A stretch of DNA of 64,000 nt from Octopus bimaculoides (taxonomy: Eukaryota), in contig NC_068983.1 in NCBI RefSeq assembly GCF_001194135.2, forward strand, positions 105,695,610-105,759,609, in the 5' to 3' direction. The translations under genes were made by a program, and so were the position numbers. Positions 2,913 to 55,700 of this stretch are shown piece by piece. Within the stretch, counting starts at the first letter, position 1, and each line of letters begins with the position of its first letter. The notes under the pieces are model-generated. The model had not been told where the DNA came from. It was given only the letters and a program-made list of their open reading frames with translations, and searched no databases.

Positions 2913-12346
<9,434 letters not shown>

Positions 12347-29640: not shown

Positions 29641-29806
29641 ATAACTGAACATATATAAACAAGCATCACCATCATAGAAGTGATGTAGTTTGTTTCTAGT
29701 TTTATATGGAAAACAAGCTGAATTTATAAGTCAATAAACTAAAACATTGTTTGATTGTTTGTTTGTTGTTTCTGCAAATTTTTTTTTTAAAGTGCAAAAA
29801 ATATGT

Positions 29807-29900: not shown

Positions 29901-29987
29901 TTAAGTGGTGTAAATAAAACTCAGCTGTTCTACAGACATCTGGCAGAATAATCCAAGAATATGAACAAGATGATTTGAAGAACAAAG
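29901..29987 (-). CDS. CENPL: CENP-L-like last coding exon (LCSSNHLVHILGLFCQMSVEQLSFIYTT*)
   Basis: ttttgtctaatttcAG acceptor; TAA stop at 29903-29901. Confidence 0.85.
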   Translation of the reverse strand, partial: LCSSNHLVHILGLFCQMSVEQLSFIYTT

Positions 29988-32900
29988 CTGAAATTAGACA
30001 AAATACATAAATGACAAATAATACATAGTCAATAAAATGATGAGAGGTTAAATTCTGAGACAGAACTATCTATCTTAGCAGAGTAATTACAAAGAACCCC
30101 CACCACCATAACCACTACAAACACCAGTATAAAACCCACTCAATAAATAATCATTATCATCAAAAATAAATTTATATTTGTGAAAGAATGGTATGATCTA
30201 GATTTAGTTGATGCTGATAAAGAATGATTAATCCTCTTGCACAGAGGTTCACAACCATTTTTCATATATGGACTCCCATTGATTGCTATTTTATTCTGGT
30301 GGATCACCGCATAGCCATTCAATGTTTAGAAACTTCTTTCAAAATTCCTATTTTGTTTTTCAAACATTTATTTGTGTAGGTTGAACTATGCAAAATGTTG
30401 GAGAAAGAAACCTAGCTGTTTCTTGCAATACATATCAATACATACATCTAAAGCAAAATTTTTTCAGGGGCCCTTAAAATATTATCGTTGATCCCCAATT
30501 TACCATTTTGTTGCTTGAACCCCCAAAAATCTTATATGGACCTTCAGGGGCCATATAGACACCATTTGAGAACTACTGCTTTAGCATTTAAACTAGCCAT
30601 ATCTGGCCAAGATAATATACTTGTTTTATTTCAAACTGGCCAGATCCAACCTCTCACACTTACCCTGAAATATTATTCTTGTAAATATTATTCATGTCAT
30701 TGAAATCTTAAAGCTACAAGGTAATGCAAGACCAAATTAATGTGAATAAATACACATTACATTTGACAGAGAAATATGAATGTTAAAGAGTTAAAGACCA
30801 GAGACAGTGTGACAATTTGCCTTAGACTAAAACTTTCCTGGTAGAAAGATGTATTTTGTTTATATGGTTTTAAGCAGTGACTCATTGATGGGCTCATTGG
30901 ACTCCTCTTTCAGTACATGCAACTATGTAATTATTGTTCTTGAATGCATATATTAATAAAGTAAAGATATGATTTTATATACATGAAACTTAAATTTTAT
31001 AGTCATCAATCAAAAAAGAAAATGCCAGACAAAAGTAGACAAAGGAAAATTTTTTTAGAAAAATATGAAAAAATAAAACTTACTTTGAACACTCCATTAA
31101 CAGAGACTGAGGCCAAAGCATTCCTGATTTTGATTAATTTCAATGACTAAAAAATAAAGAAAAACCATTTCACTTTATTTCAAATAAAAATTTTAAATAA
31201 ACTGAGAAAAAGAACAGGTTTTAAAGATTGATATGTTGGAACTATAAAAGTAGTTACTAATTGAGACAGTCAACACTTAATTTTGGCCTGAAAGAGAACT
31301 TTTTACTCTGGAAGAGAATTGAGACACCCTTATAAATGTGGTACAAACAAATTGAAATGCCCAATCTTTAATAAAATGAGGGATAATATTAAAAAAAAAA
31401 AGTTTAAACTTGTTAAACACTTGACTTTGTTGTTAGAAATCTGGAAAACTCAATTTTGAAAAATGGATCTAATTATGGATGGTTATATATCATATTAAAG
31501 ATATCTTCTTTCAAACAATTTATACATCTCTATGCAATAGTCTTAACAAGATTCTAAGATTATATCACTCAATACATTCTTTTTAAGACAGCTTTAAGAG
31601 CAGTTTACTAGGACACATACTGCCAGTGATAATTTCAAAGGAGCAGCAACTGTTACACACTAACATCAACATCATTGTTTTAATGTTCACTTTTTCATGC
31701 TAGCATAGGTCAGATAGAGCTCATTGAGACAGATTTTGTACAGTCAGACACCCTTTCTGTCACCCACCCACACCTGTTTTTAAGCAAGTATTTCTCCATG
31801 GCCAGATATATTTTCATAGAAGATTGAAAATAAATGGCACTGTATGATGATGCTCATTTACAACAGTTGTGTGATATCAAGACAAAGATACATACACATA
31901 TATATGATAGGCTTCTTTCAGTTTGCATCTAGAAAATACACTTGGAAGATGCTTGGAAATGAACCATACAGCCATACCTAAAACTCATGAGTTGATCAAT
32001 CAAAGCAGTGAAGATATTCAGAATTTTTTGAAGAACATATGTAAAAGCCTCAGCTAGGAAGTTAAAGAGCTTTGTGAACCTGACTTGCAAGTAGGTTTAA
32101 TTGCTCTAAGAAAATTGTTAACATTATGTAGCAATCAGTAAATTCAGATGTAATCTGTCTAACAGCCATGCAAATCTACTCAGTTAAATTCCAATGTTAA
32201 AATTATGCACATGGGTGAGTGATAAGAAGTTTGCTTTGCAGCTACAGGGTTCAAGTTCAGTCTCACTGAAGTATCTTCTGCTATAGCCTTGAGCTGACCA
32301 AAACTTTGAAGGGATTTGGTAGACAGAATCTGAAAGAAGTCTGTGGCACACACACACACACGAGAGGCCAACTGAAAGGTTCATAGGTTGACCAAGATGC
32401 TCTAATGAAATGTGACCAAACAAGGTTTATTTTTTTAACATATCTCCCCTTGTGATCCACACATTTCTTCCATCAGTGTTGCAGTGCTTGGATCCCATTG
32501 GTGAAGAAGCTTTCATCCTTTTGGTCAAAGTCATCAACAGCAGATATGATGTAATCACCATGATACTGGTTCCCAGCCAGGTGTTTTTTTCATTTTGAGG
32601 TACAGATGATAGTCAGATGGGGACAAATCAGGAGAATAGGGAGTGTAATCAACCAATTCAAAGCTACAGTCATGCACAGCAGCCATTGAAAGTAGGGACC
32701 TGTGTGCTGGAGCATTGTCCTAATGAAACAAGACCCCTTTCATCAGTTTTCCTGGGCTTTCATAACTGCTTTAGCAAGTTGACATAGTACTCTTCATAGA
32801 TAGTGTGGCCCTTTTGAAGATAGTTAATAAACACATTGCTGTTTGCATCACCTTCACTGCAGATGAAATGACCTTGACCTTTGGAGCAGGTGAGGAAGGG

Positions 32901-35900
32901 TATCCCCATTGCATGGAGCATGTTTTTGTTCTGGCTCAAAGTGATGAACCCAACACTCATCCAAGGTTAAGAAACATTAAAAAAAACTAGATGGATCTAC
33001 CTCAATGTCAGATTTTCCCTGGCATGCTTTCAATCAAGTGTCAGAAGACATGGCAACCACCAAGCAAAAATTTTCGTCATGCCAAGTTCATTGAGCAGAA
33101 TATTCTCAACTGTCTCATGCAGTATGCTAATAACATTGGCTACTTGATTTATTGTCAACTACTGGTCATCTATCACCATGTGGTATATACGATTGTTTTC
33201 CTTGGTGGTGATATCCAGACCTAGGATCATCTATACTCTCCCATCCCCTCCTAAATTGAGCTGCCCACTGTTGATAAAGCTGGAGTATCATCCCCTAATG
33301 TAGCAACCATATCAGTATGAATGTCATAGGGGACTAAGCCCTTTTTCTGCAGGTACTTAATAACACCATGAAGCCAAATTTTGTCCATTCTCAAGAGGAG
33401 TCATTACTAGTTACTTTTGAAGTCTCTTTTGAACAGTAAAATGCCAGTTTACCTGGAAAAAAACAATGCAGTTAATAAGAAGAGTTGAAATTAATGCATG
33501 CAAGATTTCATAGCTCAAGCATCACTCCTTCATAGTCAGCCTGTCAACTTTTCAGCCCACCCTTATATGTATGTGTATCTTTGTGTCTGTTTGTCCCTCA
33601 ATACCACTTGACAACTGGTGTTGGTGTGTTTACATTCCTGTAACTTAGCAATTTGGCAAAAGAGATCAATAGAATAAGTACTAGGATTTCAAAAAATAAA
33701 CACTAGGGTCAATTCATTCCATTACAATCCTTTAAGGTAGTATCCCAGCATGGCCACAGTCTAATGACTGAAACAAGTAAAAAATAAAAAGATGAATCAA
33801 TTCCAAGTATAACTTTAAAATTTCTTATCACAATATTGTAAAACTTCATACTTACAGTGATTTTTATTTTCAAAACCTCATAGTAAAATAATTCAATTTG
33901 TGATATGAATTCATTTACTTGATCAATTGTAAATTCACTATCATTTGGGTCTGGGTGAATTCTGCAAGGAATTGAAATTAATGTAATATTTAATAATAAT
34001 AAAAAATAAAAAAAGGATTGAGTGTTTAAAAAGTAAACATTTTATTTTAATATATTTAGTTGATAATTACAAATAATATGAGTCTTCTTTGGTTGCACTG
34101 CTTTTTTGGATTACCATGACTCTGCTGCCATCCAATTCCATTATTATGAATTTGAATCGGGAACTTGAGTCATAGTGAATCTTACATTGGCTGATTACAC
34201 AACCATGGATTTATTGCAGTTACTCTCTTGATAGCGTTTGGTGATCCTGACCATTGATCTTCTAACTGTCTCATGCTCAGCATCAATGTAAGAAGCACCA
34301 TTAGCTCAGTACAGCTCTTCCACTACCTCTTCACAATCCACCATGCTGCAGTCCTATGACTTTGCTGTATCCCTGGTATGGTGACTGAAAGGGAGCTATA
34401 CCTTGCCAAAGTGCAATCTGTAACTATGCATTGCATGGTTGTCACTCCAAGAGGTATTTTCAAAACACCCACATAATCACACAATACTGATGGCATTTTA
34501 GTTATGGAAGGAAATAGAGAAATTTAGAGAACTGTTATCTTCGTTGATAACAAAACTATTGCAACTTGTCTACAAAACAAATAATAAGAGGCCAAAACAA
34601 GAAGTGCTATGTGTAGTATTGAACTTACTTTAATTGAAGGGAATGAGCTGACTATGACATAATATGTATGCAATATTCACTCACAAGAAAAATTAATGAG
34701 TTGAGAAAGTGATTCAACATCAAAGATATCAGCATGCAAGAGATAACTGTTTTAGTCCGAATATATAATGTAGAGAGATGATACTACACCATTTTTTAAA
34801 TATAAATTAATATAACCTCAGAGAAAATAAAATAGAAGATATTTAGGTGCAAAAAAATAATTTGTCAATGATCTATTTTAAACTGAAGTTATTGCATTTG
34901 ACTGATGATGCTATGTTTACTTATGGATGACAAAAGTCAGTCTCAAAGCAACAATAGCTGGTTTCAAATTACAAGTTCTGGTATCTCACAAATTGTGAAA
35001 AAAGGAAAGCAAGCAGCACTCTCTCTCTCATGAAGTAATCACTTGAAGCTTGTATACATGTATTGTTGTAGCATGAGAAGATTGAGAATTCATTGCTGCA
35101 GCCTATGATGTTGAAATGAGGCTGTTTGTGTTCAGCCTGGTTCCTCTTCTTTGACATTGTGACCATAGGTGAGCCTGCCAGGAGCACTAGACTCTCAGAG
35201 CCACTGAACAATGCAAGCCCTCCACCAAGATAAAAAGAAATTGTGATTTAATCAAATAATCAGCTATACTCTTCTTTATGAAAATTAATCATTATAATTA
35301 CTATCATTACCAGTATTGTTGTTCCATCATGAACGTTCCCTGTAGATGCTGATTAATGAATAATTATTTAACATAAATCATACCCACTCAGCAAACAAAA
35401 GGCCTGAGAAAGTCATGGGCAGTGCATTTTATTTCAGACTAAGCCATAAAAAAAAAATTTGTAGAACAAGAAAATGGGGTCTGAATTAAGAGATTTGGCT
35501 GCTATATATAGCAAGTTAAAGGTCCACAGAGAGGATCACATGTTCACTGTTATATTAACATGTTTATCTCTCTAACACATTTCCCTTTTGGTTCATTTTC
35601 ATGTTTTTAAAAGGCTGGATTACTTCTATATACTGTATATACTTTTCAATGGGTTGCACTTTTTTAACCAAAAACTTTGATAAAAATCAGGGGTGTGACT
35701 TATCACAGGGATCTGAAGTAGAAATTTTCTTGTCAAGTTGGTATTTAATGATTTTTTTTTTTAGTTGATTAGACTTTCATAAAGTCACCTCTGTAAAGAT
35801 GTTTTAACATTTGTGAGCAAAGTTTTGAAATAAAGGTAAATATTTGATAATATTTAACAAATATTATAGGCGCAGGAGTGGCTGTGTGGTAAGTAGCTTG

Positions 35901-36031
35901 CTTACCAACCACATGGTTCCGGGTTCAGTCCCACTGCGTGGCACCTTTGGCAAGTGTCTTCTACTATAGCCTCGGGCCGACCAAAGCCTTGTGAGTGGAT
36001 TTGGTAGACGGAAACTGAAAGAAGCCCGTCG

Positions 36032-36070
<39 letters not shown>

Positions 36071-39000
36071 TTGTCCCCCCACCATCGCTTCACAACTGAT
36101 GCTGGTGTGTTTACGTCCCCGTAACTTAGCGGTTCGGCAAAAAGAGTCCGATAGAACACGTACTAGGCTTACAAAGAATAAGTCCTGGGGTCGATTAGCT
36201 CGACTAAAGGCGGTGCTCCAGCATGGCCACAGTCAAATGACTGAAACAAGTAAAAGAGTATTAGTTATATTTACATTAAAAAAAGCCATGTAACTCCCCA
36301 GATTACAGTGTGGCCTATTTGCGAGTTAACTGCAAATACCTATTTTGATAACCCAAAACTAAGGGTGCGACCTACCTGCGAGTATATATAGTAACTTTAT
36401 TCTACCTGGTATAAAATAACACCAATTCTTTTTTACTTACTTGTCCCAAACATACTGTAAATCTTTTGTATCAATTGCTATTTTAACTTCATTCATTCCC
36501 TTAATCTCATCAGGTACTTGAAACACAAGATAGGTAGGTGAAGCCACATCTTGAAAGAAGAAGAAAATAAAATACATAATACATATAATATACGTAATGT
36601 CACATTAGAATCTTACAATGTTTGAATTAAGTTTCAGGTTTTACTTCAAAATATTTTCAATCAGTTATCATTTAGTGAATTGTTAGGGCATCAGGCCTTG
36701 TGAAATTTCTTCTGACTCTTTACATTCTGGGTTCAAATCTTACCAAAGTCAACTTCAATTTTCATTCCTCCAGGATCAATCAAGCATTGAGATTGATGAA
36801 ATCAATGACTCCTCTCCTCAAAACTGCTGACTTTATGGCCTAAATAAGAAAATATTTTTCTAGAATATTTTGGTTAGAAGAGCGGTAGAATCAGTTAAGT
36901 ACTGAACATCTTTCATTGCATTGTTCTTTCCCTCTACATTTTGAGTTCAAATCTCACCAGATTTTGATTATTTTCATTAAAAGATGTACCAGTCATATGC
37001 TGGAGATGACTTAATTGACTATACATAATTTACATAGTTGTAAACCTATGCAAAAGTAAGAAATCAATAAGTCACTATGCAAGCATGGCTTAGATGTTTT
37101 GCAAATGTTTTTCTGCATGATAATTTTACTACTACCAAATACTCTTTAAGATTATGCTTTAACTACACCTTTGAATACGGAAACAAACATTTAGGGACCA
37201 AATGAGATCCTTGCAGAAAATGTGCAAAAGAAAACCACTTAAATGATGGTAGTGGAGAAAAAAAAAACAACTCTTAGATATGACATTGTCCTTAGATAAT
37301 GAAAATCGAAAATCTATCTCTGCCATCTACATGAAAGTGGACATTTATATTTATTTAATAAATTGTGAAACAATAAAAGACAATCAACCAAGTCAAGAAG
37401 ATTGATGAATATTAAAAGACCAATAATTCTATTTTATACTCTGTTAGAGGAAGAAGGATAACACCCTGGCCTTTGTAAGGGCCGGCAAGATTGATGAGGG
37501 GTATGTTGCAAGAAATAGAGTTTAGGAGTTTCTGCAGTAAGAAGCAGTAGTACATAAAGATAGCCAATTCCAGTTATCCCAAGACGAGAGACTTGGTCAG
37601 AGTACTTGCAACAGAATAGATTCCAAGGACCAGATGGTTCTGTTAAACCAGGAAATTGATTATATATATATATATACAGGGTACGGTGAATAAATTGCCT
37701 AAATTACACAAAAATGAAAATAACACTGACATCTCATTTTAACAGATATTATATTTACCAAAATTACATAAAAATATCTTGAAATATTAATGAGTAAATT
37801 GATTCAATAAAATCGTCATTAGCTTCAACCATGCCCTCCAGATGACTTCGAAAGGGTAGTCTCAAATGGGCCGGTTATGCTGCACTAGCATAGGCCATGG
37901 TTATGGTCTCACTTGACTTGCCAGGTCTTCTCAAGCACAACATATCTCCAAAAGTCTTAGTTGCTCATCATTGCTTCCGTGAGGCCCAACATTCGAAGGT
38001 CATGCTTCACCATCCCAGGTCTTCCTGGGTCTACCTCTTCCACAGGTTCCCTCTACTGCTAGGGTGTGTCACACAGCTGTCCTCATCCATATGTAACACA
38101 TGACTATACCAACGCAGTTGTCTCTCTTGCACACCACATCTGATGCTACTTATGTCCATACACATACATATATATATTATCCAATAACAGGTACAATATG
38201 TCCAGCAGTTTTTTGTATCCTTTCTGCTTACCCAATTTTACTCACAAGACTTGGATTGACCCAAGGTTATGATAGAATACATTTAATGAAAGTGCAGCAT
38301 GGTTGGAGTGAAACTGGATGTATGAGGGGGTGCTGAAAAGTTCCTGGCTTTGGGTAAAAGAAAACACAGGAGGATCAGTTAATTATTATTTTATTCAATA
38401 TATTCCCCTCTCCTTATTGTGGAAGTCCTTCAGCTTTTCTAAGCCTTGTAAAAAAACTTGCAAGGCTGAACCTCCAACTAGGCCTTTCGCGATACCCTTA
38501 AAGCCAGGAACTTTTCAGCATCCCCTCTTATATAACAGCAAAATGAATTTAACATTATGGCTATGCTTGCATGTATACATTTTGAGACGCCAGGTCTTGT
38601 TATAAAGAACAAAGTATTTACAGGCTATATTCCTTTAACACTGTTTATTTACCCACTTTCAGAGAGTATAAACTAAACACAGAGAAATAAAAGAAAAATT
38701 GTGTGATACAATGTTTGAAACTAACCAGAGTTGATCTTGCCAGTCCATAATGATAACATCCAACAAAGATCAATTGATGAGAAATGTAATGGACTGATTT
38801 TAGCATGAAATTCTTTCTGAAAGAGAAAACAAAGGAAATGGTTTATTAGGAAAAAAGTTTGCAGGTCCAAGATCATTACATACATAGTTGTATACACACT
38901 CACACACATATAGTTCCAGAATAGTTGAAGTCTGTCTTGAGTCAACAGCATTTAAGCAATTCTGGTACATGACTCCATAAATGATATGTCAGTCTATTGT

Positions 39001-42000: not shown

Positions 42001-45000
42001 TAAATTTTTATCCCTCTTGAACAATTACTTTTACATTTTCGCTCTTCAAAAAATTCCTTTCGTAAATAAAAAGTCGGCTGTCAATAATAGGAAAGTACTG
42101 TGAAAGAATGTATACCTCAAACCACTCACAAGTCCAAGATCTAAGCATGCTAGATCCTCTAATGATCATAACTGGGTAGCATGAAAATGGCTTCTCATGT
42201 GCAGTAAAATGTGGTGATAAATCTACACAGCACATAAGTGCCAGTAGTATCATTTTATTTTGAGTGCCTGCAAAAAACAAATATCAAAGGTATTTAAGAA
42301 ATGACTTCTAACATTAGCTATAAGGACATGGAAATATTCCTGCTGGAGGATTATAGTTAATTGAAATGAACAAGTGAATGGTTAGTACATGCTTTGCTGA
42401 ATTTGGAGGGATGAACTCAGAATATAAATTAAAGAAACTAGAAATTGTAGATTACAAGGCTTACCATTTCCATCATTCCATCAATTTTATTATAAAAAAA
42501 AAAAAAACTCCAATTATATCTAATCCCTTTCTTCCAATAGAATTCTCTATCCTACAGCTAATTCTTTGCTGTGTTGGATACCTAAATTACTATCAAAAGT
42601 TTCGCTGGTTATCTGGGTGCTATTGTTTATGTGAGTAGAGCAGACCAAGCCTACAGTAACAACCCAAAGTCAACAACTTTGTAATTTGCAAACTAAATTT
42701 CTTTTCTCACTTTTTTAAAACTTTTTTTCTACCTAATATTTATTGAAATACCCGACCAAGTAGTTTTGTATCCTTTTATTATAATATACTCCGTTATTTA
42801 AAGNNNNNNNNNNNNNNNNNNNNNNNNNNNNNNNNNNNNNNNNNNNNNNNNNNNNNNNNNNNNNNNNNNNNNNNNNNNNNNNNNNNNNNNNNNNNNNNNN
42901 NNNNNNNNNNNNNNNNNNNNNNNNNNNNNNNNNNNNNNNNNNNNNNNNNNNNNNNNNNNNNNNNNNNNNNNNNNNNNNNNNNNNNNNNNNNGGTTCATTC
43001 CCACTGCGTGGCACTTTGGGCAAGTGTCTTCTACTATAGCCTCGGGCCGACCAAAGCCTTGTGAGTGGATTTGGTAGACGGAAACTGAAAGAAGCCCGTC
43101 GTATATATGTATATATATATATGTATGTGTGTGTCTGTGTTTGTCCCCCCAACATCGCTTGACAACCGATGCTGGTGTGTTTACGTCCCCGTAACTTAGC
43201 GGTTCGGCAAAAGAGACCGATAGAATAAGTCCTGGGGTCGATTAGCTCGACTAAAGGCGGTGCTCCAGCATGGCCGCAGTTAAATGACTGAAACAAGTAA
43301 AAGAGTAACAAACCAACACTGATTGCCAAGCAGTATGTGGGAGAAGCACAGACACAAAGACACATGCACACATTTATATATCTGTATTTGTATATATAAA
43401 CAATAGGCTTCCGCACAGTTTCCATCTACCAAATTCACTTACAATCTATTGGGAAGGTTTTAAAACAAATTAAGACATCATCTTTCAGATAATTTTCCTC
43501 CTTTAAAATCAGTGACTATTTTATTGCAACAGAACACCTCAAATGATTAAAACTAGAAATTATGAATCTTGCAAAGCATATTAATAAAGATTCAGAAATT
43601 CTGACACAGAATGGTTTTCAATGGAAACAAAAAATTGTTTTAATGTGAAATGGAAACAAGTTTTAGACACAATTGCCTATGGGGAAAAGCACTGACACCT
43701 ACAATATACCAAGTATTGCAATGTCGCATAGAGACATAGCCTTTAAGGAATATTTCAAAAAGGGAATCACAGAATGGAATGAAAGCTTTGCAGTGCTTTA
43801 ATTAGTTATCAGGAACTACTAAATTCAAATTTGTTTCATTTACATTTAGTGTGCTAAAGAAAGACAACTCTCACAGTAAAGTTCACAAATTTTAACGAGT
43901 TTGTCTACCATGAAGAGAAGTAAGTCTTTTTTTTTGGAAAGGTTGTTTGACAGAAATGAAGAAGTGTGTGGACAATAATTACTAGAATAGACAACTTTAT
44001 CTGGAGAGTAATTTAAACATTTGTAATTGCTTTTGTAAAAAAGCTGCATGTAATTGTGAAATAGAGCAGTCTTCTATATCATATCTTCTAACCTCTTATC
44101 CACTTTTATGCTACTATTTTGTATATCATCATCATTTAAAATCCGTTTTCCATACTGACATGGGTTGGATGGTTTGACAGGAGCTGGCTAAGGAGACTGC
44201 ACCAGGCTTCACTGTCTGTTTTGGCATGGTTTTTACAATTGGATGCCCTTCCTAACACCAACCATCTTATAGAGTAGTCAGTGCTTTTTATGTGGCAATT
44301 TGATAGAGAGAAACTGAAAGAGGCTTCTCATTCATATATATATAGGTGTGGCTCTGTGATAAGAAGCTTGCTTCCCAAACACATGGTTCCACTTTCAGTC
44401 CCACAGCATGGTACCTTGGGCAAGTGTCATCTACTATAGCCTTGGACTCACCAAAGCCTTGTGAGTGGATTTGGTAGATGGAAGCTGAAAGAAGCCCGTC
44501 ATGTGTGCATGTGTGTGTGTCTTTGCGTCTGTGTTTATCCCCCACCACTGCTTGACAACCAGTGCTGGTGTGTTTACATCCCCATAAAATATAGTTTTGG
44601 AAAATGAGACCAATAGAATAAGTACCAGGTTTAAAAACAAAAAATAAGTCCTGGTGTCGATTCATTTGACTAAAAAATTCTCCAAGGTGGTGCCCCAGCA
44701 TGGTCATATTCTAACGGTTATTTCTGATACTTTTCTCGTATTGGGCGTTTATTTCTGTATGACTTGTTCATTTCTCTTTTTTTCCCCATTTTCTATATAA
44801 GTGAAGATATTTCCTCTATCTACAAAACAAGAAGTCACATTGCGGAACTGTTATTTTAACGAGTTGTGTCCATTTATCACTGACGAGATATATCTGGACC
44901 ACTGGATACTCCCAAATCAGTTGTTGAGTGTTCCACCTGTGAGGGATCAATGCTAGATGTGTCAAAACAATTGTCATGATTAATAAATTCTCGTATATTC

Positions 45001-45187
45001 CATCTTACATTTACCATATATATACTCTCTGGGTGATTGGCATTAGGAAGGGCATCCAGCTGTAGAAACTCTGCCAAATCAGATTGGAGCCTGGTGTAGC
45101 CATCTGGTTTCACCAGTCCTCAGTCAAATCGTCCAACCCATGCTAGCATGGAAAGCGGATGTTAAACGATGATGATGATATACATAC

Positions 45188-45240
<53 letters not shown>

Positions 45241-47377
45241 TACATATACTTATGCACACACACATATATATAATATATATACTTACATACATGTAGTCTC
45301 CATCTGTTTCATCTCTTGGATTGGTAGTTTTGTATCAGAACATGTGTTGACTCAGCTTTTTCTGTTTCTCATCCTATCTACTCTGCTGTACCCCACTCTC
45401 TTCCTTCTATACAATCAATGTATACACACTTGATGTCATGCCAAAAAACACTCCCTTTCTTATAGAAATGACACTACATATCTTTCATGCTCAACCTTCC
45501 TCTATCATGCATCATCCACTTACAACTCAGAAGCCACAAGCCAAACCTGCACTGATTCTATGATCAAAAATCTTGAAAGCATCCTCCAATGGAAATATAA
45601 CATACTTGTCTCTTTCAGTAGAAGACACAAAAACACAAATGCTGCTCACATCTAGAAAATGTCACCACGCCACAGCCTTCTTAATCAAGATCATCATATA
45701 ACTAGAGCCCTTGCAATTGCTCCAAATGTTGGACTTCACTATCACCAAGGATCTCTCCTGACAAAAACACATCCTTAACGGCATCTCAATGACTGGCCCT
45801 TCTCCTCAGGGCCAGAAGATACTTCATCCCCAACAATTATTGATATTTTATAAAGCTTAGGTGAATCCCACAATGAGGTATTGATCTCACATCTGGAATA
45901 GTGGTAATGCTGCACACACATGTATCCCAGACTATATCCAGAAAAGAGCCAATCTTCAAGTGATTGGTAGAAAAGTCAGTTAGACACACTCCAGTCTCTG
46001 GCCCACTGTCTCTTTTCTCTTTCTGACAACTGTTATAATGGCCTGTTACTCAGAGCTAGTTAAACTCTTGCAACTCAGGCACTCCCAACTCACTTATTGC
46101 TTTATTTCTCATCATCCTTGTGATGCCCCACCTACCATACAACACTAATTACTACCTGTACTCCCAATCCAAGTCCTTTCCCAGAATGGTGCCACTCTAG
46201 AAATCTTTCCCTATCCATGTCTTTCCAGCAGATGTTGACTTGCAAAAGTTCACGAGGATCATTAATGGCATTACTTTTACTGGTCTAAGAGGGCCTGCTA
46301 AAGGCATAGGTGCCTTTCTCCTGACTCAACAATAAATAAATAAGTGTATGTATAGATACACATACGCATGCATACATATACACACATATATACATACATA
46401 ATATATATGTGTGCATGCCGGTGGCACGTAAAAGCACCCACTACACTCTCGGAGTGGTTGGCGTTTGGAAGGGCATCCATCTGTAGAAACTCTGCCAAAT
46501 CAGATTGGAGCCTGGTGTAGCCATCTGGTTTCACCAGTCCTCAGTCAAATCGTCCAACCCATGCTAGCATGGAAAGCGGACGTTAAATGACGACGGTGAT
46601 GATGATGATGACAAGGAAGAGAAATATTTATGAACACGCAAACTGTCCAACCTATGCCAGTATGGAAGGCAGATGTTAAATGATGATGATGATGATGATG
46701 ACACACAACTTTGACACAAAATGAATTGTCTAACTTTTAGAAAGATAATTACCCTTTTTGGTATACATTGTCAATTGTACAGCATCTTTGTCAGCTGAAG
46801 TTAAATAGATAAGAACAAGTGATGAGTAAAATGACAATAAACAAATTCTTATGCAATCACAAAATCCAAGATTTTTAAAGGTAAGTAAAACTCATGTTTT
46901 TTTTCCCCCGCCTAAAGACATGAGCAATATAAACAAAGTAAAGAAGTTCCAGTTGGGTAATTGCAATAACAAAAGGATTAGGGAGATAAAGTAACAGATT
47001 ACAGAAGACAAAATAATAATAATAAGGGAAATTAACAAGAATAAGGAGATATCAACTACAATGTGTAACATGTAGGAATTTTATAATGCTTTCTCAGATT
47101 AGGATAAAGCTGCAATGTAAAGCAGGAGTATAAATTCATTCATTTTTTTTATCAATACATTTCATATATGGTTTGGACAAACATATTAAGAAAGTATTCA
47201 ATGGCTGGATATCCTTCCTGTTGCTAACCCTTACTTGTTTTTAGGTAAGGTATTTTTCTACTGGTCTTCACATAATGAAGTGATGAAAGCACAGAGGTAC
47301 AGGATGTATTGCTTACAGGAAACATAAAGAATGTTACTGTTTTAGGCAAATGATGTTACTGTGAAGACATGCAGTAC

Positions 47378-47422
<45 letters not shown>

Positions 47423-50400
47423 AGGTGACACTAAAAATTGTGTTACTATTTCATGCATATGTATAAATTAAATGGTAGTATGACTTTGGGACCATTAAGA
47501 CCTGCATAAACTCATCAAATCTGAAACAGTAAGAGATCAAATCTTCTTTGACCAGGTGTGAATTATAAAAGATGAAGACCAAACTAAATACAGAGTTCAA
47601 GAAAAGTAATGGTGATCTATGTAGATAAAAATCATTAACTTCACAAATATGAATTAAGTTTGTCTCTCGGGGAAGTTGGGTAAGAAAGATGATTTCCAGC
47701 ATTTCTTGACTGGCAATCTAGAGGAAGATTTACCACTCATTCACTTAACATCATGAAACTGGAACAAAATGCTACCCCATAAGTGAACCCCTTTATATTT
47801 ACATTCTGCATTACATTGTAGTATAAGAGAGTGAATATGAAAAACAACCTGCTTAATACATCCATGTATTGTATGCCATGTGATACATGTGATAGCAAGG
47901 ACTGCATTATCAATTAAATTGATGTTTAGCCTCTGGTGATCTTTTTTGACTTTTGGTCAACTTTGATTGAACTCTGGTCATCCATGATAAAAACTATTTC
48001 AACTATCCTGTTTTTTTTATAAATCTAGATCTATGTTTCTCAATGTGTTTTTCATTATAAAGACAGTAATGTATGGTTTGAGGGAGACTTTACTAATTCT
48101 AGAATGTTGATGAGAGACGACACAGAAGATCTGTCTATACTTTAAGTCTCAAGTGGAAGTAGACATTCAAGAATTGTGACAGAAAGTAGCTAGGATATTT
48201 TTAGAAAGAATAAAAATCAAAGGAAAATAGCAGAATTTTAATTTAGAGGTATCAACCTGTGTAGTAACATGGATAAACATATACAATTATAGTACTCTTG
48301 TGTTTTTCTCCGTCACGACATATAAATGAGAAAGGAAGGGGGTGATAGATGAATAAGGATGGCAAATTGATAGTGGGAGCATTTCAACTCTGTGTGAGTA
48401 TATGTGTATGTATTTAAACGGGAAGTATGTGAATGTGTGTATGTGCAATGGAGAACATTCAATGCTGAAAAGAAAAATCAAACAGTGTTTCAACTCTGTG
48501 TGAGTATATGTATGTGTGTGTGCATGTACAAGGAAAGTATGTAAATGTACGTGTGAACCAGCGTTCTTTCAGTAACAAACGATGATCAATCTCAAAAAAC
48601 AACCACTAGATAATGTTGACAAGTGTATTAATTTGATTTACCATCCATATTTATATATAAAATACTACAATTAGCCATCACTTTTGACAGCACAGGGCCA
48701 GCTAGTCTATAACTATTTAAATATAGATGTAGAAGTATGCTATTAAGAAGAATAGTGTAGATATGTTGACAGATTAATAGTGTAAAGATATTGACATTTA
48801 AAAGAAAGAATAGAGATGTTGACAAATAACAATCAATGTAGAAATGCTGAGAGATGATCAAATAATGTGTAGATTTCAAGAAATAGCAAAAATGTTAGCA
48901 GTGTTGAGACATGAGGAACAAAATTTATTAAAAGCAGAAAGAAGAATGAAAAAGATACAAAATACCTTCAGAAACTTTAAATCCTTCGAGTGTTGTAAAA
49001 TTACAGGAAGAAACAGACACTGAATGAATCCCCTTTGTTTTCTGCAAGAACAAATGGTTGAGATTTTTATAATGGTATCAAAAATGTCAGAATAGTAGAA
49101 GTCCTTCTTAAAGTGAATGGTCTTTATGTCATGTAGTGTACACACTCTTGAATCAACTTTAATGGTTCCTGATGTATTGCATTGCTTCGTTTAAAGTTAG
49201 CTCTGATTCAGTAGAACTATAATCAAAGGTGTCTAACTGTATCTATCCTTTTTTCCACAGAGCATCTCACACTGCATCATACTATTGGTCTTGATTTTAA
49301 GATGGTAAGGTTTGAAATAAAGGAACTTTGGTTGCTATTTCCAACACTATAAGCAACTGTGTAGTGTTTGATAGAGCTGGATTGCTGGCTTAGGCTTGGA
49401 TCTCTTTCTCCTAAAGAAAGATTGTACTGCCACTACTTACAATTGTGACCTATTGTGAGATCTAATTGTGCTGAGTATGGACATAATACTATTGTGAGAT
49501 CTAATTGTGCTGAGTATGGACACAATGTAGTACAAGGATACAAACTACCAACCTTTCAACAGGTTTGCTAGTAATCTGTTGACTCAGACATCTTTGTTCT
49601 CTTTGTATTGTATATTGTACACTATTTGGTACATTTGTGGTACCCCAAGCCAATAAATTGGCAAAACATCTCAATATCTCAAGGGATTCACTATTGTATC
49701 ATATCAAAATTTAATTTTTCTTTTTTTTTTCTAGTTAGTAATTTACAACAGAAATGCTGGGAAAACAGAAGCTAACATCTTTGTAAAATAGTAGAATCCA
49801 ATTTTACAAGTTAAATCCCTTATATACTATATATTTATTTATTTATTTTCCTTTTTAATTGATCAAAAGTATATTTTCTTTGCCTTTAATGCTTTATTCA
49901 CTATGTTACCACCATGCTGCAAAGAGCCTTGTGACACTTTGCCCTCACCTCTCATATATGTCTATTTTTTTGCCTCACAAAATTAAGTGGGGCACAATGT
50001 TATATCAATAGGGATAGACAGAAGTAATCAACTTAGACTTACTAACATTATTTACATTTGACGGATATTTGTCCTCATCTTGTTTGTTGTTAACACAATG
50101 TTTTGAGCATATGGAGTAGTGGTTAAGAGTGTGGGTTCTAACCCCAAGATTCTAAGTTCAATTCCAGGTAGTGACCTGAATAATAATAATAACACCGAAA
50201 AATACCTTAGGAATGAGAACCCAGGTTCAAAATTTCCCCAAGACACCTGATGTATAGAACTGCATTAGACTTACTAATAAAACCAATAAACTATTTATTA
50301 TCCCATATATCCATCTCTCCTCATGGCACATTATCTGATCTTACTTTACAAACTGAATTAACTGTTTCTCAGTACAGAACATCTCTAATGTCTGTTTTTC

Positions 50401-52291
50401 AAACTTGTTTGTATACCACCTTTGCCAAATTGACTCACTTCATCCATCTTTTCTCTGGCTTATAAGTAACTTTGGTCATTAGACATTTATGGAACTGGAG
50501 TGATAATTTTATGACAATTTTCATTTTGTTGGTAATATAAATAAATTGAAACAAAAAATAGTGAAGTTAAAATAGATACTCACTGACTGACAGTAAGATG
50601 TGAGAGATGTAGAATACATCTTGAATTTAGCAGGAGTAGTTTCAAAGTTCAAAATTGGACTTAATTTAAATAAATGACATGTATTCTTCAGGGCTAGTTA
50701 AAAAAAAAAAAAGTAAAATCAGAGATGGTACTGAAAGATATTAAACTATTTAGTATTTAAATTCAACATGTATGCTGTGGATCAAAGTCATAATTCATCA
50801 GAGTCATGCACTAATTTCCTAATTTAGATCTATAAGTTAAGACCGTTCTCTTGAGATTCATAACTTTCTTATAGTGAAATTTAACATGCAGTATAAAATG
50901 GTAAAAGAAGGCATCTGTAGCTGCATCAGATTTAAAAAATTACTTTTGGAAACAACATATGTCATTTCATGGCTACATAGAGACACTTTCCTGTATTTAC
51001 TCTTACCTTAAATCATAGAAACAATATTGAAAAGCAAAAACTTTAAACAATGTAAAAATGATTTTCTGATGTTTGCAACACTCAGCATATAGTCAAGAGT
51101 TCTCACAGCTCACATCATATCTTGCCCTCTTTCTTTACTCAAAACTTAATACATATAACATAATATCTCTTGACTGATGTACAGATCTTCTCTGCAGGTA
51201 ACCTTAAAAACATGCTGCAATGGAAACATCTCAACTTCATCTTAGTCAATAGTACCAATGAATCTGCCTCTATACATCTCAAGATGAGCGCAACAATGCA
51301 TTCACACTATCCTTGAAGAACGCGTAGGGAAAGTTCCTAACACTCAACAAATGCTAGGTCTTGCTTTCTCTGGTGAATGCACAAGGTTGATCATGAATAT
51401 ATCACTAGATTTATTCTTCAGAGCTAGAAAAGACTGCAGCCTTGAACAGTATCCTGACTGCATGCATGGTATAATTTTGTACTAGATGTGGTGATGTGGG
51501 ACAGTGCATTAACAAGCACATTCTGCACTGCATCCATACAAAAAAAACCATGTGAATGAAAAGAAAAAAAACTTTTACTAACACTCTTCATGTTCACTAT
51601 ATATATATCGATTTTTACTATAGCAGTTTGCTCTTCAGAACTTGTTTGTATACCACCTTTGCCAAATTGACTCACTTCATCCATCTTTTCTCTGTCTAAC
51701 ATCACTCTTTCTCATTAAGTACATTGCATAATCTTGCTTCCTCACATCTGCAATATGAAACACACTCAGCCTATTCCCCTTCTCCTATAACACACTACAT
51801 TAACTCTATTCAGCAGTTCATACACATCAAATTAGGTGACCTAAGAAAGGCTAGGTGCACTATTTCTCCTCAAAGAAATTTCCAGTGAATTAACATTAAC
51901 TTAGCTTTGCAAATCAAAATTATACATGTTAATCCTAGTGTATAAAACAAAAGTTTCTTTCATGTGCTTGATTTTATATCAGAATAAGTACGGAGAATAC
52001 CTGGTATCTTTGGTGGAGCAACTGCTTTAGCTGCTGATTGTATTTCACCTGTAAATATAAAAATGGAGTATGAGAAATTGCTTACATAAACAACTTTCCT
52101 TCTATATTTACTGATTTTACTTTTACGAATGCAGTTTAAATGATAAATATACAAAACAAAATTCTTAACAGTAGTTTTCATTATCTACATTGTATCAATG
52201 AATAAATTTCTTTAAAAGGAATTTTAAAATATATACTTGGTAGTTTTCGTATTACAGGTGTTCTTGTATGAAATTGTGGTGGCAAGGACAT
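29901..52291 (-). CDS. CENPL: Centromere protein L (CENP-L-like, CCAN inner kinetochore subunit), 11 coding exons, 312 aa
   Basis: Exons 52291-52237, 52048-52001, 50693-50584, 49041-48966, 46794-46753, 42267-42116, 38816-38726, 36549-36441, 33961-33856, 31146-31084, 29987-29901. All are GT-AG; intron phases 1,1,0,1,1,0,1,2,0,0 join into 939 nt with no internal stop. Protein: MSLPPQFHTRTPVIRKLPSEIQSAAKAVAPPKIPALKNTCHLFKLSPILNFETTPAKFKMYSTSLTSYCQSKTKGIHSVSVSSCNFTTLEGFKVSEADKDAVQLTMYTKKGTQNKMILLALMCCVDLSPHFTAHEKPFSCYPVMIIRGSSMLRSWTCEWFEKEFHAKISPLHFSSIDLCWMLSLWTGKINSDVASPTYLVFQVPDEIKGMNEVKIAIDTKDLQYVWDKIHPDPNDSEFTIDQVNEFISQIELFYYEVLKIKITSLKLIKIRNALASVSVNGVFKLCSSNHLVHILGLFCQMSVEQLSFIYTT. The segment CCV...FSCYPVMIIRG...WFEKEFHAKISPL...DLCWMLSLWT parallels human CENP-L as I recall it (FCCV...FTCLPLFLANG...WFQKTFDCYFSPL...NLSWMAAMWT). 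Confidence 0.88.
31084..31146 (-). CDS. CENPL: CENP-L-like exon (SLKLIKIRNALASVSVNGVFK)
   Basis: tttttctttattttttAG acceptor, GTAAGT donor, 63 nt, phase 0/0. Confidence 0.87.
32359..33566 (-). mobile_element. Near full-length mariner (D,D34D) transposon, inactivated
   Basis: ~1.2 kb with imperfect ~35-bp TIRs (acgagaggccaactgaaaggttcatagg / rc ataagggtgggctgaaaagttgacagg). Peptide GVLFH*DNAPAH...YSPDLSPSDY has 34 residues between the Ds. Confidence 0.85.
33856..33961 (-). CDS. CENPL: CENP-L-like exon (KIHPDPNDSEFTIDQVNEF...LKIKIT)
   Basis: ttccttgcAG acceptor, GTAAGT donor, 106 nt. Confidence 0.88.
35631..36393. mobile_element. TIR element (TACTGTATATACT...GAGTATATATAGTA) interrupted by a SINE
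   Basis: 13-14 bp terminal inverted repeats; SINE 35868-36260 lies inside. Confidence 0.55.
35868..36260 (+). mobile_element. Young full-length tRNA-derived SINE with internal (TA)n/(TG)n; the main family of the window
   Basis: aggcgcaggagtggctgtgtggtaag...ggttcagtccc head and ...gactgaaacaagtaaaagagta tail. Other + copies at 24800-25075, 32200-32358 with 33567-33790, 39799-39962, 41485-41697, 42992-43307, 44343-44706, 53688-53839, 56794-57220. Minus copies at 27240-27385, 38230-38320, 57392-57772. Confidence 0.9.
36441..36549 (-). CDS. CENPL: CENP-L-like exon (DVASPTYLVFQVPDEIKG...LQYVWD)
   Basis: ttttcttcttctttcaAG acceptor, GTAAGT donor, 109 nt. Confidence 0.88.
37675..37862 (-). mobile_element. 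Terminal fragment of the DD37D (maT-like) element
   Basis: TACAGGGTACGGTGAATAAATTG TIR and the next ~130 bp match 52354-52475. Confidence 0.75.
37870..38105 (-). mobile_element. RTE LINE 3' end remnant
   Basis: Frameshifted HVLHMDEDSCV...EGTCGRGRPRKTW...KHDLRML...EKT, typical of the RTE ORF2 C-terminus. Confidence 0.75.
38321..38530. mobile_element. 210-bp mariner-derived MITE (partial copy at ~26790-26915)
   Basis: 31-bp TIRs tatgagggggtgctgaaaagttcctggcttt / rc taagaggggatgctgaaaagttcctggcttt (2 mismatches). The gctgaaaagtt core is shared with the DD34D element TIR. Confidence 0.85.
38726..38816 (-). CDS. CENPL: CENP-L-like exon (KEFHAKISPLHFSSIDLCWMLSLWTGKINS)
   Basis: ttcctttgttttctctttcAG acceptor, G|GTTAGT donor, 91 nt. 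Confidence 0.9.
40429..40755 (-). mobile_element. Young RTE-tail retroposon ending in (GAT)n; + copies at 45039-45178 and 46418-46612
   Basis: Near-identical ...ggaagggcatccagctgtagaaactctgccaaatcagattggagcc...gttaaacgatgatgatg sequence in all three copies. Confidence 0.85.
42116..42267 (-). CDS. CENPL: CENP-L-like exon (GTQNKMILLALMCCV...SWTCEWFE)
   Basis: tatttgttttttgcAG acceptor, GAG|GTATAC donor (the one that keeps frame), 152 nt. Confidence 0.87.
45700..46260 (+). mobile_element. CR1/Jockey-type LINE 3' remnant
   Basis: Frameshifted peptide with GL.ITKDLS..KHI, ARRYF.PQQLL..YKA, HIWNSG..AHT...YIQKRA, characteristic of the post-RT region. Confidence 0.65.
46753..46794 (-). CDS. CENPL: CENP-L-like small exon (ADKDAVQLTMYTKK)
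   Basis: tttaacttcAG acceptor, GG|GTAATT donor, 42 nt, symmetric phase 1; only one frame is open. Confidence 0.82.
48966..49041 (-). CDS. CENPL: CENP-L-like exon (KTKGIHSVSVSSCNFTTLEGFKVSE)
   Basis: tttgttcttgcAG acceptor, AAG|GTATTT donor, 76 nt. Confidence 0.85.
49450..49527. repeat. 39-bp tandem duplication
   Basis: ctattgtgagatctaattgtgctgagtatggacataata followed by ctattgtgagatctaattgtgctgagtatggacacaatg. Confidence 0.92.
50045..50252. mobile_element. Rearranged tRNA-derived SINE (forward head, preceded by an apparently inverted tail)
   Basis: A box TGGAGTAGTGG at 50112, B-box-like AGTTCAATTCC near 50156, (AAT)n, ends CCTGATG at 50252. The assignment of 50045-50104 as its inverted 3' part is from recollection of the family. 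Confidence 0.55.
50584..50693 (-). CDS. CENPL: CENP-L-like exon (ALKNTCHLFKLSPILNF...TSYCQS)
   Basis: Poly-T tract plus aactAG acceptor, GTGAGT donor, 110 nt. Confidence 0.88.
52001..52048 (-). CDS. CENPL: CENP-L-like exon (SEIQSAAKAVAPPKIP)
   Basis: tttatatttacAG acceptor, G|GTATTC donor, 48 nt, phase 1/1. Confidence 0.8.
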
Positions 52292-52304
52292 TTTGGTAAA
52301 ATTC
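52237..52304 (-). CDS. CENPL: CENP-L-like exon with start codon (ATG at 52291; MSLPPQFHTRTPVIRKLP)
   Basis: Strong acceptor tttttttttcttttttcAG before 52304, 13 nt leader, donor GTATAT. The acceptor implies an upstream exon that I did not locate. Confidence 0.75.
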
Positions 52305-54539: not shown

Positions 54540-55700
54540 GTACTGAAGCATCTACGTGGTCACCCGACTCGCAAAAAATAGTAGCTACATATCATTAACT
54601 CTACTCTCTTAAATAAAGGATGGAAACATTAGGTAACGTTATCTTACATACCACTAAATGGTCGCGGCCGGAAAATCTTTGATACGTGGTTTCCTGGATC
54701 AATGCTGACCTGGGTCAGCGCACTGTTTACACATCTAAATGGTTCACTATCATGAATTCCAAATGTCAGCACTGATTTGCCTCCCTGTCTCTATAAGGAC
54801 AGAGAGAAAGTTCAGCAATTACTTTTTCTTTATAGTCTCGCAAAGCGTTTTTTTCTCCCGACTTTTATATTGTTGCATTATAGTTTCTATGATAATTATA
54901 AGCCATTTCTTGTTTCTACTGAGTGTTATATTCTATTGTATGCATTTCTAAGATAAACCGAGGACAGCCATAACAACAACGACTGCGTAAAGAAATCCTT
55001 GACGCAAATAAAGATACTATGGGCCCAACAATTAAGGTTGTAGGAACAGTATTTCATCCACCAGTTCCTGACTACACAGCAAAATTCAAGTAGACAAGTA
55101 TTCACTCGACAAAACACGAGTTTGACAAGACTGTCATCTACAAGTTTCAGTTACAAACTCTATACATACAAGTGAAAATAAACGGCCAATTTACGTTAGC
55201 TTTAGATATCGAAAGCCATATGAGGGATAGAATATACTAAACATTGAAATATAAAATATTTTTGATGAAAAAGATGACTTCATATGCCTTTGTTCATCAA
55301 CATAATTGTCACTTTCCTGGCTTAAAATGTAAGATAATTAAAATAACTTCAAAATATAAAATGATGCCGAGTATTAACTAATCAACATTTCGAAAGAATG
55401 TATCAAAATTAAATTGAATATGTTAATAACTAAATTATCCATCTTAAAATTATTAGTTAAAGCAATTTACCTTTCCAGAAAGAAAGAAAAGTCTAAGAAA
55501 TTAGCAGTCTATATATAAGTATAATACAATGATAATTGCCATGAAATATACAACCAAACTGGCGAAGGTAATCAACAAACTTAATGTCGCGCCTAAAAAG
55601 CAGATGTGTTTTGATTGGTTAAAAATTGTTGTCGGGTCCATCCAAGTAAATATGAATTTCGAGTAGATAAAGTTGGAGTTACCTCCCCTTGGTCTCTCCT
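54540..55700 (-). promoter_or_regulatory. Candidate promoter / first non-coding exon region of the CENP-L-like gene
   Basis: By eye, CpG rises here relative to the gene bodies. It lies upstream of the acceptor at 52304, with a CCAAT on the minus strand near 55613-55618. No exon boundary was fixed, and part of the interval is repeat-derived. Confidence 0.3.

What the first reader, a model, noticed from the sequence alone, without database searches (positions are those of the whole stretch)
29901..52304. Hidden CENP-L gene: 11 small coding exons over 22 kb, almost missed by the ORF track
Seen: eleven 42-152 nt exons with canonical splice sites join without a stop into 312 aa, which is very unlikely by chance. 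Known: CENP-L pairs with CENP-N in the CCAN, and most CCAN subunits are lost in Drosophila and C. elegans. Inference: this animal keeps a divergent CENP-L. Such fast-evolving, fragmented genes are easily missed or split by annotation, which can cause false 'loss' calls. The exon count looks higher than I recall for human CENPL, so intron history is also worth checking.
Basis: partly seen in the sequence, partly recalled or inferred. Interest (0 to 1): 0.75.

Follow-up and report, generated by a model that had tools for sequence, protein, structure and literature searches.

The report
Octopus CENP-L gene, already annotated
The region holds a real, intact 11-coding-exon gene for the kinetochore protein CENP-L of Octopus bimaculoides, but public databases already annotate exactly this 312-residue protein, so the finding is correct but ordinary.

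Summary
On the minus strand, 11 coding exons of 42-152 nt (window 52291 down to 29901) have GT..AG borders. They join into a 939-nt reading frame of 312 codons plus TAA.

The protein is CENP-L:
- Pfam PF13092: E 4.4e-26, 92 bits against a cut-off of 24.
- Human CENP-L in the PDB: E 3.5e-26.
- An AlphaFold model (pLDDT 90.6) superposes on human CENP-L at TM 0.81-0.85.

It is not hidden from annotation. The same 312-residue sequence is RefSeq XP_014786173.1, "centromere protein L [Octopus bimaculoides]". Window 19901-62291 is identical to GCA_001194135.2 CM046603.1.

The assembly gap at 42804-42991 lies inside intron 5, beside a SINE-like insertion. Gap-free O. vulgaris and Argonauta loci have the same 42-nt and 152-nt exons adjacent and in phase, so no coding sequence is missing.

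The high exon count is the ancestral bilaterian structure. The intron positions and phases are shared with a gastropod, a bivalve, a horseshoe crab and a hemichordate. A lizard and a pipefish have only four introns, so vertebrates lost introns and the octopus gained none.

CENP-L is routinely annotated in molluscs, annelids and chelicerates. Novelty: already known. Interest: low.

The parts
52237..52304 (-). First coding exon. Acceptor before 52304, 13 nt of 5' UTR, ATG at 52291-52289, 55 nt of CDS, donor CAA|gtatat.
   Evidence: The same 68-nt exon occurs in O. vulgaris.
52001..52048 (-). Coding exon 2 (48 nt, enters in phase 1).
50584..50693 (-). Coding exon 3 (110 nt). Start of the Pfam CENP-L match (LKNTCHLFKLSPILNF...).
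48966..49041 (-). Coding exon 4 (76 nt).
46753..46794 (-). Coding exon 5 (42 nt, the shortest). Donor AAG|gtaatt.
   Evidence: A 42-nt exon also occurs in O. vulgaris and Argonauta.
42804..42991 (.). Assembly gap (188 N) inside intron 5, next to a SINE-like repeat insertion (about 42992-43230). No coding sequence is affected.
   Evidence: Gap-free orthologous introns have no exon here.
42116..42267 (-). Coding exon 6 (152 nt, the longest).
38726..38816 (-). Coding exon 7 (91 nt). Holds the conserved W-M-x-x-x-W-T-G motif.
36441..36549 (-). Coding exon 8 (109 nt).
33856..33961 (-). Coding exon 9 (106 nt).
31084..31146 (-). Coding exon 10 (63 nt).
29901..29987 (-). Last coding exon (84 nt plus stop TAA at 29903-29901). 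Encodes the C-terminal helix.
55471..55492 (-). Putative 5' UTR exon, inferred only from homology to an annotated O. vulgaris exon. It is 22 nt here and 20 nt in O. vulgaris, with AG and GT borders kept.
   Evidence: Inference; no transcript data.
63031..63060 (-). Putative first (5' UTR) exon, inferred only from homology to the first annotated O. vulgaris exon. The donor |gttcgtaa is kept.
   Evidence: Inference; no transcript data.

Best explanation
This is the single-copy CENP-L (centromere protein L) gene of Octopus bimaculoides. It lies on the minus strand, with 11 coding exons spread over 22.4 kb of repeat-rich introns, and encodes a 312-residue protein.

By homology to human CENP-L and yeast Iml3, the protein should pair with its paralogue CENP-N through a C-terminal dimerisation domain. 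Together they would form the CENP-LN 'vault' of the inner-kinetochore CCAN, which grips centromeric linker DNA and binds a CENP-C motif.

Shown here: the exon structure, the intact reading frame, family membership by sequence and by fold, identity to the public annotation, and conservation of intron positions across bilaterians.

Inferred from the family, not tested: binding to CENP-N, CENP-C and DNA, and localisation to centromeres.
For: - Exon model of 939 nt and 312 aa with canonical splice sites.
- The exact sequence is XP_014786173.1, centromere protein L [Octopus bimaculoides].
- The window is identical to GCA_001194135.2 CM046603.1, and the gene call there has the same span.
- Pfam PF13092: E 4.4e-26, 92.3 bits against a cut-off of 24.4, covering profile positions 4-280 of 307.
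- phmmer against the PDB hits only human CENP-L, E 3.5e-26, residues 42-343 of 344.
- AlphaFold2 with a 49-sequence alignment gives pLDDT 90.6 and pTM 0.88.
- Foldseek: human CENP-L chains at E 1.8e-23, TM 0.81-0.85, rmsd 2.8 A; then yeast Iml3; then RdgC, the known distant relative (PMC9235857).
- Orthologues with the same exon sizes exist in O. vulgaris and Argonauta.
- 94 family members were found in a library of 1.84 billion representative proteins.
- Intron positions and phases are shared with a gastropod, a bivalve, a horseshoe crab and a hemichordate.
- A decapodiform orthologue of 312 aa is a contiguous ORF on short contigs assembled from public sequencing runs, probably RNA-seq, and is collinear with the octopus protein.
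- Mechanistic background on the CENP-LN vault, DNA binding and the CENP-C FIIDE motif comes from PMC9235857 and PMC9252888.
Against: - No transcript data from O. bimaculoides itself were available, so the ten junctions rest on homology, splice consensus and the RefSeq model.
- dN/dS between O. bimaculoides and O. vulgaris is high (0.75, from only 11 synonymous and 31 non-synonymous changes), so constraint over the short term looks weak.
- The presence of the partner CENP-N in this genome was not checked.
Confidence: 0.97

Rival explanations
1. The locus is a decaying or non-functional copy (unitary pseudogene) that still looks intact.
For: dN/dS is 0.75 between O. bimaculoides and O. vulgaris. 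The gene is embedded in transposon-rich sequence.
Against: - No stop or frameshift in 312 codons, and all 20 splice sites are canonical.
- Exon sizes are identical in O. vulgaris and nearly so in Argonauta.
- Family motifs are kept and the fold is confidently predicted.
- The CDS (95.4% nt identity) is more conserved than the introns (84-92%).
- Centromere proteins commonly evolve fast (general knowledge).
Confidence: 0.02
2. The exon chain is a chance assembly of open AG..GT segments and not a gene.
For: 3860 open AG..GT segments of 42-152 nt exist on this strand. Two false exon calls did arise in my first model.
Against: - The spliced-alignment score is far above all nulls.
- Pfam, PDB and Foldseek matches are all strong.
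- The exact protein is in RefSeq.
- Orthologues have the same structure.
Confidence: 0.005
3. The protein is the paralogue CENP-N, or another member of the CENP-LN/RdgC-like fold, rather than CENP-L.
For: CENP-L and CENP-N share an LN homology domain of about 130 residues (PMC9235857).
Against: - Only the CENP-L Pfam family is hit.
- Only CENP-L chains are hit in the PDB by sequence.
- Foldseek ranks CENP-L and Iml3 first, while a yeast inner-kinetochore chain I could not identify (8ow1_NN) reaches only E 5e-3 and TM 0.2.
- There is no N-terminal pyrin domain.
Confidence: 0.005

Closest known systems
RefSeq XP_014786173.1 / UniRef A0A0L8FXU8, centromere protein L [Octopus bimaculoides]
   Same: Identical 312-residue sequence. 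The gene call has the same span on the same assembly record.
   Different: Nothing. This is the same gene.
Octopus vulgaris / O. sinensis CENP-L (CAI9719937.1, CAI9719938.1, XP_029633993.1)
   Same: 90.7% protein identity. The 11 coding exon sizes are the same, and the introns can be aligned at 84-92% identity.
   Different: One O. vulgaris isoform starts at an upstream ATG and has 333 aa. In the window the middle 5' exon is 22 nt rather than 20 nt, which puts that ATG out of frame.
Human CENP-L (PDB 7pkn, 7qoo, 7r5s, 7r5v, 7xho; chain L)
   Same: Same family and same fold: E 3.5e-26, TM 0.81-0.85, collinear over residues 42-343.
   Different: Only about 24% identity, and the N-terminal tail is shorter. 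In the vertebrates tested (a lizard and a pipefish) the gene has 5 coding exons against 11 here, and only the last intron is shared. Human genomic DNA itself was not examined.
Yeast Iml3 (PDB 4je3, 4kr1, 4it3; 6qld chain L)
   Same: Same fold, and the orthologous CCAN subunit (Foldseek E 5e-9 to 5e-8).
   Different: Much more distant: TM 0.39-0.54, 10-12% identity, and a shorter protein.

Membership tests
CENP-L (Pfam PF13092; CCAN subunit) | Sequence match to the family profile above its curated threshold | tested here: met
   E 4.4e-26, 92.3 bits against a cut-off of 24.4, profile positions 4-280 of 307.
CENP-L (Pfam PF13092; CCAN subunit) | Fold of CENP-L/Iml3 (LN homology domain plus C-terminal dimerisation domain) | tested here: met
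   Model pLDDT 90.6. Foldseek top hits are human CENP-L at TM 0.81-0.85, then Iml3.
CENP-L (Pfam PF13092; CCAN subunit) | Orthology to CENP-L rather than to the paralogue CENP-N | tested here: met
   Only CENP-L is hit by sequence in Pfam and the PDB. The nearest named relatives are all annotated CENP-L. Intron positions are shared with other metazoan CENP-L genes. No explicit L/N phylogeny was built.
CENP-L (Pfam PF13092; CCAN subunit) | Intact, spliceable gene | tested here: met
   939-nt frame, 20 canonical splice sites, and an intronic gap only. Direct RNA evidence from this species was not available.
CENP-L (Pfam PF13092; CCAN subunit) | Partner CENP-N and other CCAN subunits present in the same genome | not tested
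CENP-L (Pfam PF13092; CCAN subunit) | Heterodimer with CENP-N, binding to CENP-C and DNA, constitutive centromere localisation | not testable with these tools
   Needs biochemistry or imaging. Inferred from the human structure (PMC9235857).

The most novel reading that the evidence does not exclude
The octopus gene itself is known. The least trivial reading is comparative.

Its 10-intron coding structure is the ancestral bilaterian one. It is shared, position and phase, with a gastropod, a bivalve, a horseshoe crab and a hemichordate. The two jawed vertebrates tested have a 4-intron gene that shares only the last intron.

This implies a concerted loss of about seven to nine introns in the vertebrate stem, for example by recombination with a partly processed cDNA. 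It leaves one 543-nt exon where five ancestral introns used to be.

Together with a dN/dS of 0.75 between two Octopus species, CENP-L could serve as a small case study of gene-structure and sequence turnover in centromere proteins.
Probability: 0.8. Interest if true: 0.2.

Novelty: already known. Interest (0 to 1): 0.1.

Why it matters
It matters little for discovery. The gene, its protein and its name are already in RefSeq and UniProt for this very assembly, and CENP-L is routinely annotated across molluscs and other non-ecdysozoan or slowly evolving animals.

The finding is useful in three smaller ways:
- It is a positive control. A reader with no tools recovered an 11-exon gene exactly.
- It is a caution. 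An open chain with canonical splice sites is not evidence by itself, because thousands of open AG..GT segments exist here and a false exon was easy to obtain.
- It is a comparative note. Vertebrate CENP-L genes, not the octopus gene, are the ones with the derived exon structure.

Tried and rejected
1. A word-index search with 75 aa from two exons found nothing. The orthologue was in fact in the database, so this was a false negative and not evidence of absence.
2. Spliced alignment guided by my recalled human CENP-L sequence gave a 10-exon core. (That recalled sequence was later checked against PDB alignments.) The model included a false exon at 51065/51080-51007 and an exon 5 that was 18 nt too long. 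Both were rejected once O. vulgaris and Argonauta proteins were aligned. I also first chose the wrong frame for exons 1-2.
3. A single-sequence AlphaFold run on that wrong 325-aa draft gave pLDDT 32 and was discarded.
4. A profile search with a 49-sequence alignment returned only 3 proteins, so it gave no broad named family list. I used cluster look-ups instead.
5. The fish protein P0066 had no locus on record, so a pipefish was used instead.
6. The Tachypleus gene model aligned imperfectly, with an artefactual 2-nt exon. Its intron count (9-10) is therefore approximate.
7. Pfam scans of neighbouring ORFs found only retrotransposon domains. The first attempt failed on coordinates.
8. Pseudogene, chance chain and CENP-N were each considered and rejected (see the rival explanations).

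Full report
**What is in the sequence.** The window is AT-rich eukaryotic DNA (GC about 0.19-0.45) with microsatellites and transposon debris. The finding's low coordinate, 29901, is the last base of a minus-strand TAA (29903-29901). Its high coordinate, 52304, is the first base after a minus-strand acceptor (ttttttcag|GAATTT), 13 nt upstream of an ATG at 52291. So the gene runs on the minus strand.

**First test of homology.** A tblastn with human CENP-L gave two collinear minus-strand pieces, 42262-42116 and 38822-38739. I had written the human sequence from memory as a lead, and later confirmed it residue by residue over positions 59-343 against PDB alignments. Joined, the two pieces hit only human CENP-L chains among 177,635 PDB sequences (E 3.1e-5).

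**Exon model.**
- I wrote a small protein-to-genome spliced aligner that requires GT..AG, handles all three phases and adds simple splice-site scores.
- With human CENP-L it gave a collinear chain scoring 255. Controls scored 60-143: twelve shuffled proteins, the reversed protein, the opposite strand, and the rest of the window on both strands.
- That draft was partly wrong. Searching the big protein collection with it returned O. vulgaris and Argonauta hians CENP-L, and aligning them exposed two errors.
- One error was an 'exon' at 51065-51007 with an excellent donor, which is spurious. The other was an exon 5 that was 18 nt too long.
- Re-running the aligner with the O. vulgaris protein gave the final model. 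It has 11 coding exons of 55 (68 with the UTR part), 48, 110, 76, 42, 152, 91, 109, 106, 63 and 87 nt, and ten GT..AG introns of 188-4485 nt. The frame is 939 nt, or 312 codons plus TAA.

**Is it more than chance?**
- A stop-free join alone is not. The minus strand of the region holds 8679 AG..GT segments of 42-152 nt, and 3860 have an open frame. My own false exon shows how easily such pieces arise.
- The evidence is homology and conservation.
- Pfam PF13092 (CENP-L) matches at E 4.4e-26, 92.3 bits against a curated cut-off of 24.4.
- Human CENP-L in the PDB matches at E 3.5e-26 over residues 42-343 of 344.
- 94 relatives were found in a library of 1.84 billion representative proteins.
- The CDS is 95.4% identical to O. 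vulgaris, while the introns are 84-92% identical.

**Structure.**
- AlphaFold2 with a 49-sequence alignment gave pLDDT 90.6 and pTM 0.88.
- Foldseek against the PDB puts six human CENP-L chains first (E 1.8e-23 to 1.6e-19, TM 0.81-0.85, rmsd about 2.8 A). Yeast Iml3 follows (E about 5e-9), and then E. coli RdgC.
- RdgC is the known distant relative of the CENP-L/N fold (PMC9235857).

**The assembly gap.**
- The 188 N at 42804-42991 lie within intron 5. They are 3761 nt downstream of exon 5 (46794-46753) and 536 nt upstream of exon 6 (42267-42116).
- The two exons meet in phase 1 (G|GC).
- In the gap-free O. vulgaris assembly the 42-nt and 152-nt exons are neighbours across a 3221-nt intron. 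In Argonauta the intron is 1072 nt. Neither has an exon between them.
- The flank on the high-coordinate side of the gap (about 42992-43230) is a SINE-like repeat that is not at the orthologous place in O. vulgaris. The rest of both flanks aligns to the O. vulgaris intron, which has about 575 nt of plain intron where the window has the repeat plus the gap.
- No coding sequence is hidden by the gap.
- A second gap (52476-52618) lies 172 nt upstream of the exon-1 acceptor and corresponds to about 86 nt of O. vulgaris intron.

**Existing annotation.**
- An exact-sequence look-up finds the 312-aa protein as XP_014786173.1, XP_014786174.1 and XP_014786175.1, 'centromere protein L [Octopus bimaculoides]', and as UniRef A0A0L8FXU8.
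- The encoding locus, GCA_001194135.2 CM046603.1:105715510-105757900, is base-for-base the reverse complement of window 19901-62291. The called gene spans exactly 29901-52291.
- The same 90% cluster holds O. vulgaris and O. sinensis CENP-L.
- Other named relatives come from Acanthosepion, Littorina, Gigantopelta, Sinanodonta, Ostrea, Paralvinella, Owenia, Lamellibrachia, Limulus, Tachypleus, Ptychodera, Anneissia and Holothuria.
- So the gene is neither missed nor split, and keeping CENP-L is the rule outside the lineages known to have lost the CCAN. Drosophila and C. elegans lack most CCAN components (PMC5579357).

**Transcript-level support (indirect).** A decapodiform cephalopod orthologue, also 312 aa, is a contiguous 939-nt ORF on short contigs (1.3-2.7 kb) assembled from public sequencing runs, probably RNA-seq. 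The index lists it in 114 blocks of that collection. It is collinear with the octopus protein across exons 2-11, with only four gaps of 1-2 residues. No O. bimaculoides transcripts were available.

**Intron history.** I fetched the annotated loci of eight CENP-L genes and re-derived their exons with the aligner. All except Tachypleus reproduced the deposited protein exactly.
- On a joint alignment, the octopus introns have phases 1,1,0,1,1,0,1,2,0,0.
- They fall in the same columns and phases in Argonauta, Littorina (gastropod), Sinanodonta (bivalve), Tachypleus (horseshoe crab; the first intron is missing) and Ptychodera (hemichordate; the intron after the 42-nt exon is missing).
- The lizard Zootoca and the pipefish Stigmatopora have only four introns. 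Only the last one coincides with an octopus intron, and a single 543-546-nt exon covers the span of five ancestral introns.
- So the 11-exon layout is ancestral for bilaterians, and the low exon number in vertebrates is derived.

**How it most likely works.** By homology (inference), the protein pairs with CENP-N through its C-terminal domain to form the CENP-LN vault of the CCAN. The vault surrounds linker DNA with basic residues and binds a CENP-C motif (PMC9235857; PMC9252888). The conserved family motifs are present in the octopus protein: SP-L/I-x-x-F, W-M-x-x-x-W-x-G, W-D-x-I-H and G-x-x-K-L/I. Rapid sequence change is normal for this family: 24% identity to human, and dN/dS of 0.75 against O. 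vulgaris from 42 substitutions.

**Surroundings.**
- By homology to an annotated O. vulgaris isoform, two short 5' exons probably lie at 55492-55471 and about 63060-63031. The transcription unit would then reach about 63.1 kb.
- The degenerate LTR retrotransposon at 58.6-62.5 kb would then sit in the first intron. It carries DUF7041, RVT_1 and an integrase zinc domain.
- No other gene is called within window 19901-62291.

**Verdict.** Interest is low. The only mildly new point is the contrast in intron history with vertebrates.

Noticed in passing
window 58641-62485 (minus strand): Degenerate LTR-retrotransposon remnants, split into several ORFs: gag-like DUF7041 (61610-62485, E 1.6e-15), reverse transcriptase RVT_1 (60785-61156, E 1.7e-14) and a weak integrase zinc domain (59643-60011). 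This is the GC-rich stretch with strong GC skew seen. It probably sits in the first intron of the CENP-L transcription unit.
   Followed up: partly
window about 42992-43230, 35870-36230, 44290-44700, 32190-32470, 57316-57795, 53700-53830: Many copies of a SINE-like repeat, each ending in a (TA)n/(TG)n microsatellite. Translated fragments recur, such as 'RRSGCVVSSLL.NHMVPGS' and 'SFSFRLPNPLTRLWSARGYSRRHLPKV'. One copy abuts the assembly gap at 42804-42991 and is absent from the orthologous O. vulgaris intron, which probably explains the gap.
   Followed up: partly
window 55471-55492 and 63031-63060 (minus strand): Sequences homologous to two upstream exons of the O. vulgaris 333-aa isoform. The middle exon is 22 nt here and 20 nt in O. 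vulgaris. The upstream ATG that extends the O. vulgaris protein is therefore out of frame in this species (30+22+13 = 65 nt), which is consistent with the 312-aa RefSeq product.
   Followed up: partly
window 51007-51080 (minus strand): A decoy exon: an open frame (…QKIIFTLFKVFAFQYCFYDL) with a perfect AAG|gtaaga donor and local similarity to human CENP-L residues 62-80. It fooled the human-guided spliced alignment, but it is not part of the gene in any octopod orthologue. I could not tell whether it is pure chance or a decayed duplicate of exon 3.
   Followed up: partly
loci L005 (Zootoca vivipara) and L009 (Stigmatopora argus) against L001, L003, L004, L006, L007, L008: Vertebrate CENP-L genes have 5 coding exons, with one exon of 543-546 nt, and share only the last intron with the 10-11-exon genes of molluscs, a horseshoe crab and a hemichordate. 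This points to a block loss of ancestral introns in the vertebrate stem. In the lizard the gene lies next to a DARS2-like gene.
   Followed up: yes
CDS in window 29901-52291 against L002 (O. vulgaris): dN/dS is 0.75 (31 non-synonymous and 11 synonymous changes). Synonymous divergence (0.058) is lower than intron divergence (about 0.08-0.16). Counts are small. This could reflect fast protein evolution plus constraint on splicing signals in very short exons.
   Followed up: partly
window 5632-7086 and 2943-3296 (plus strand): A 484-aa open frame rich in S, N and P, with no Pfam match, and a 117-aa frame upstream on the same strand. They are probably large coding exons of a neighbouring gene on the plus strand, where AT skew is negative (12-24 kb).
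   Followed up: no
window 52695-53126 (-), 53418-53789 (+), 32555-33400 (-), 29260-29652 (-): Transposase-like fragments resembling mariner/Tc1 (for example '…DNAPAHRS…YSPDLSPSDYHL') and a retroelement-like fragment directly downstream of the CENP-L stop codon. The three of these four ORFs that I scanned (52698-53126, 53418-53786, 29263-29652) gave no Pfam hit at E <= 0.01; 32555-33400 was never scanned, because one search failed on its coordinates. The identification therefore rests on motif recognition from memory.
   Followed up: partly
The word-index protein search missed the orthologue cluster when queried with 75 residues from two exons, although the cluster representative shares long identical stretches with them. 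'No homologue found' from that tool is not evidence of absence for short queries.
   Followed up: yes
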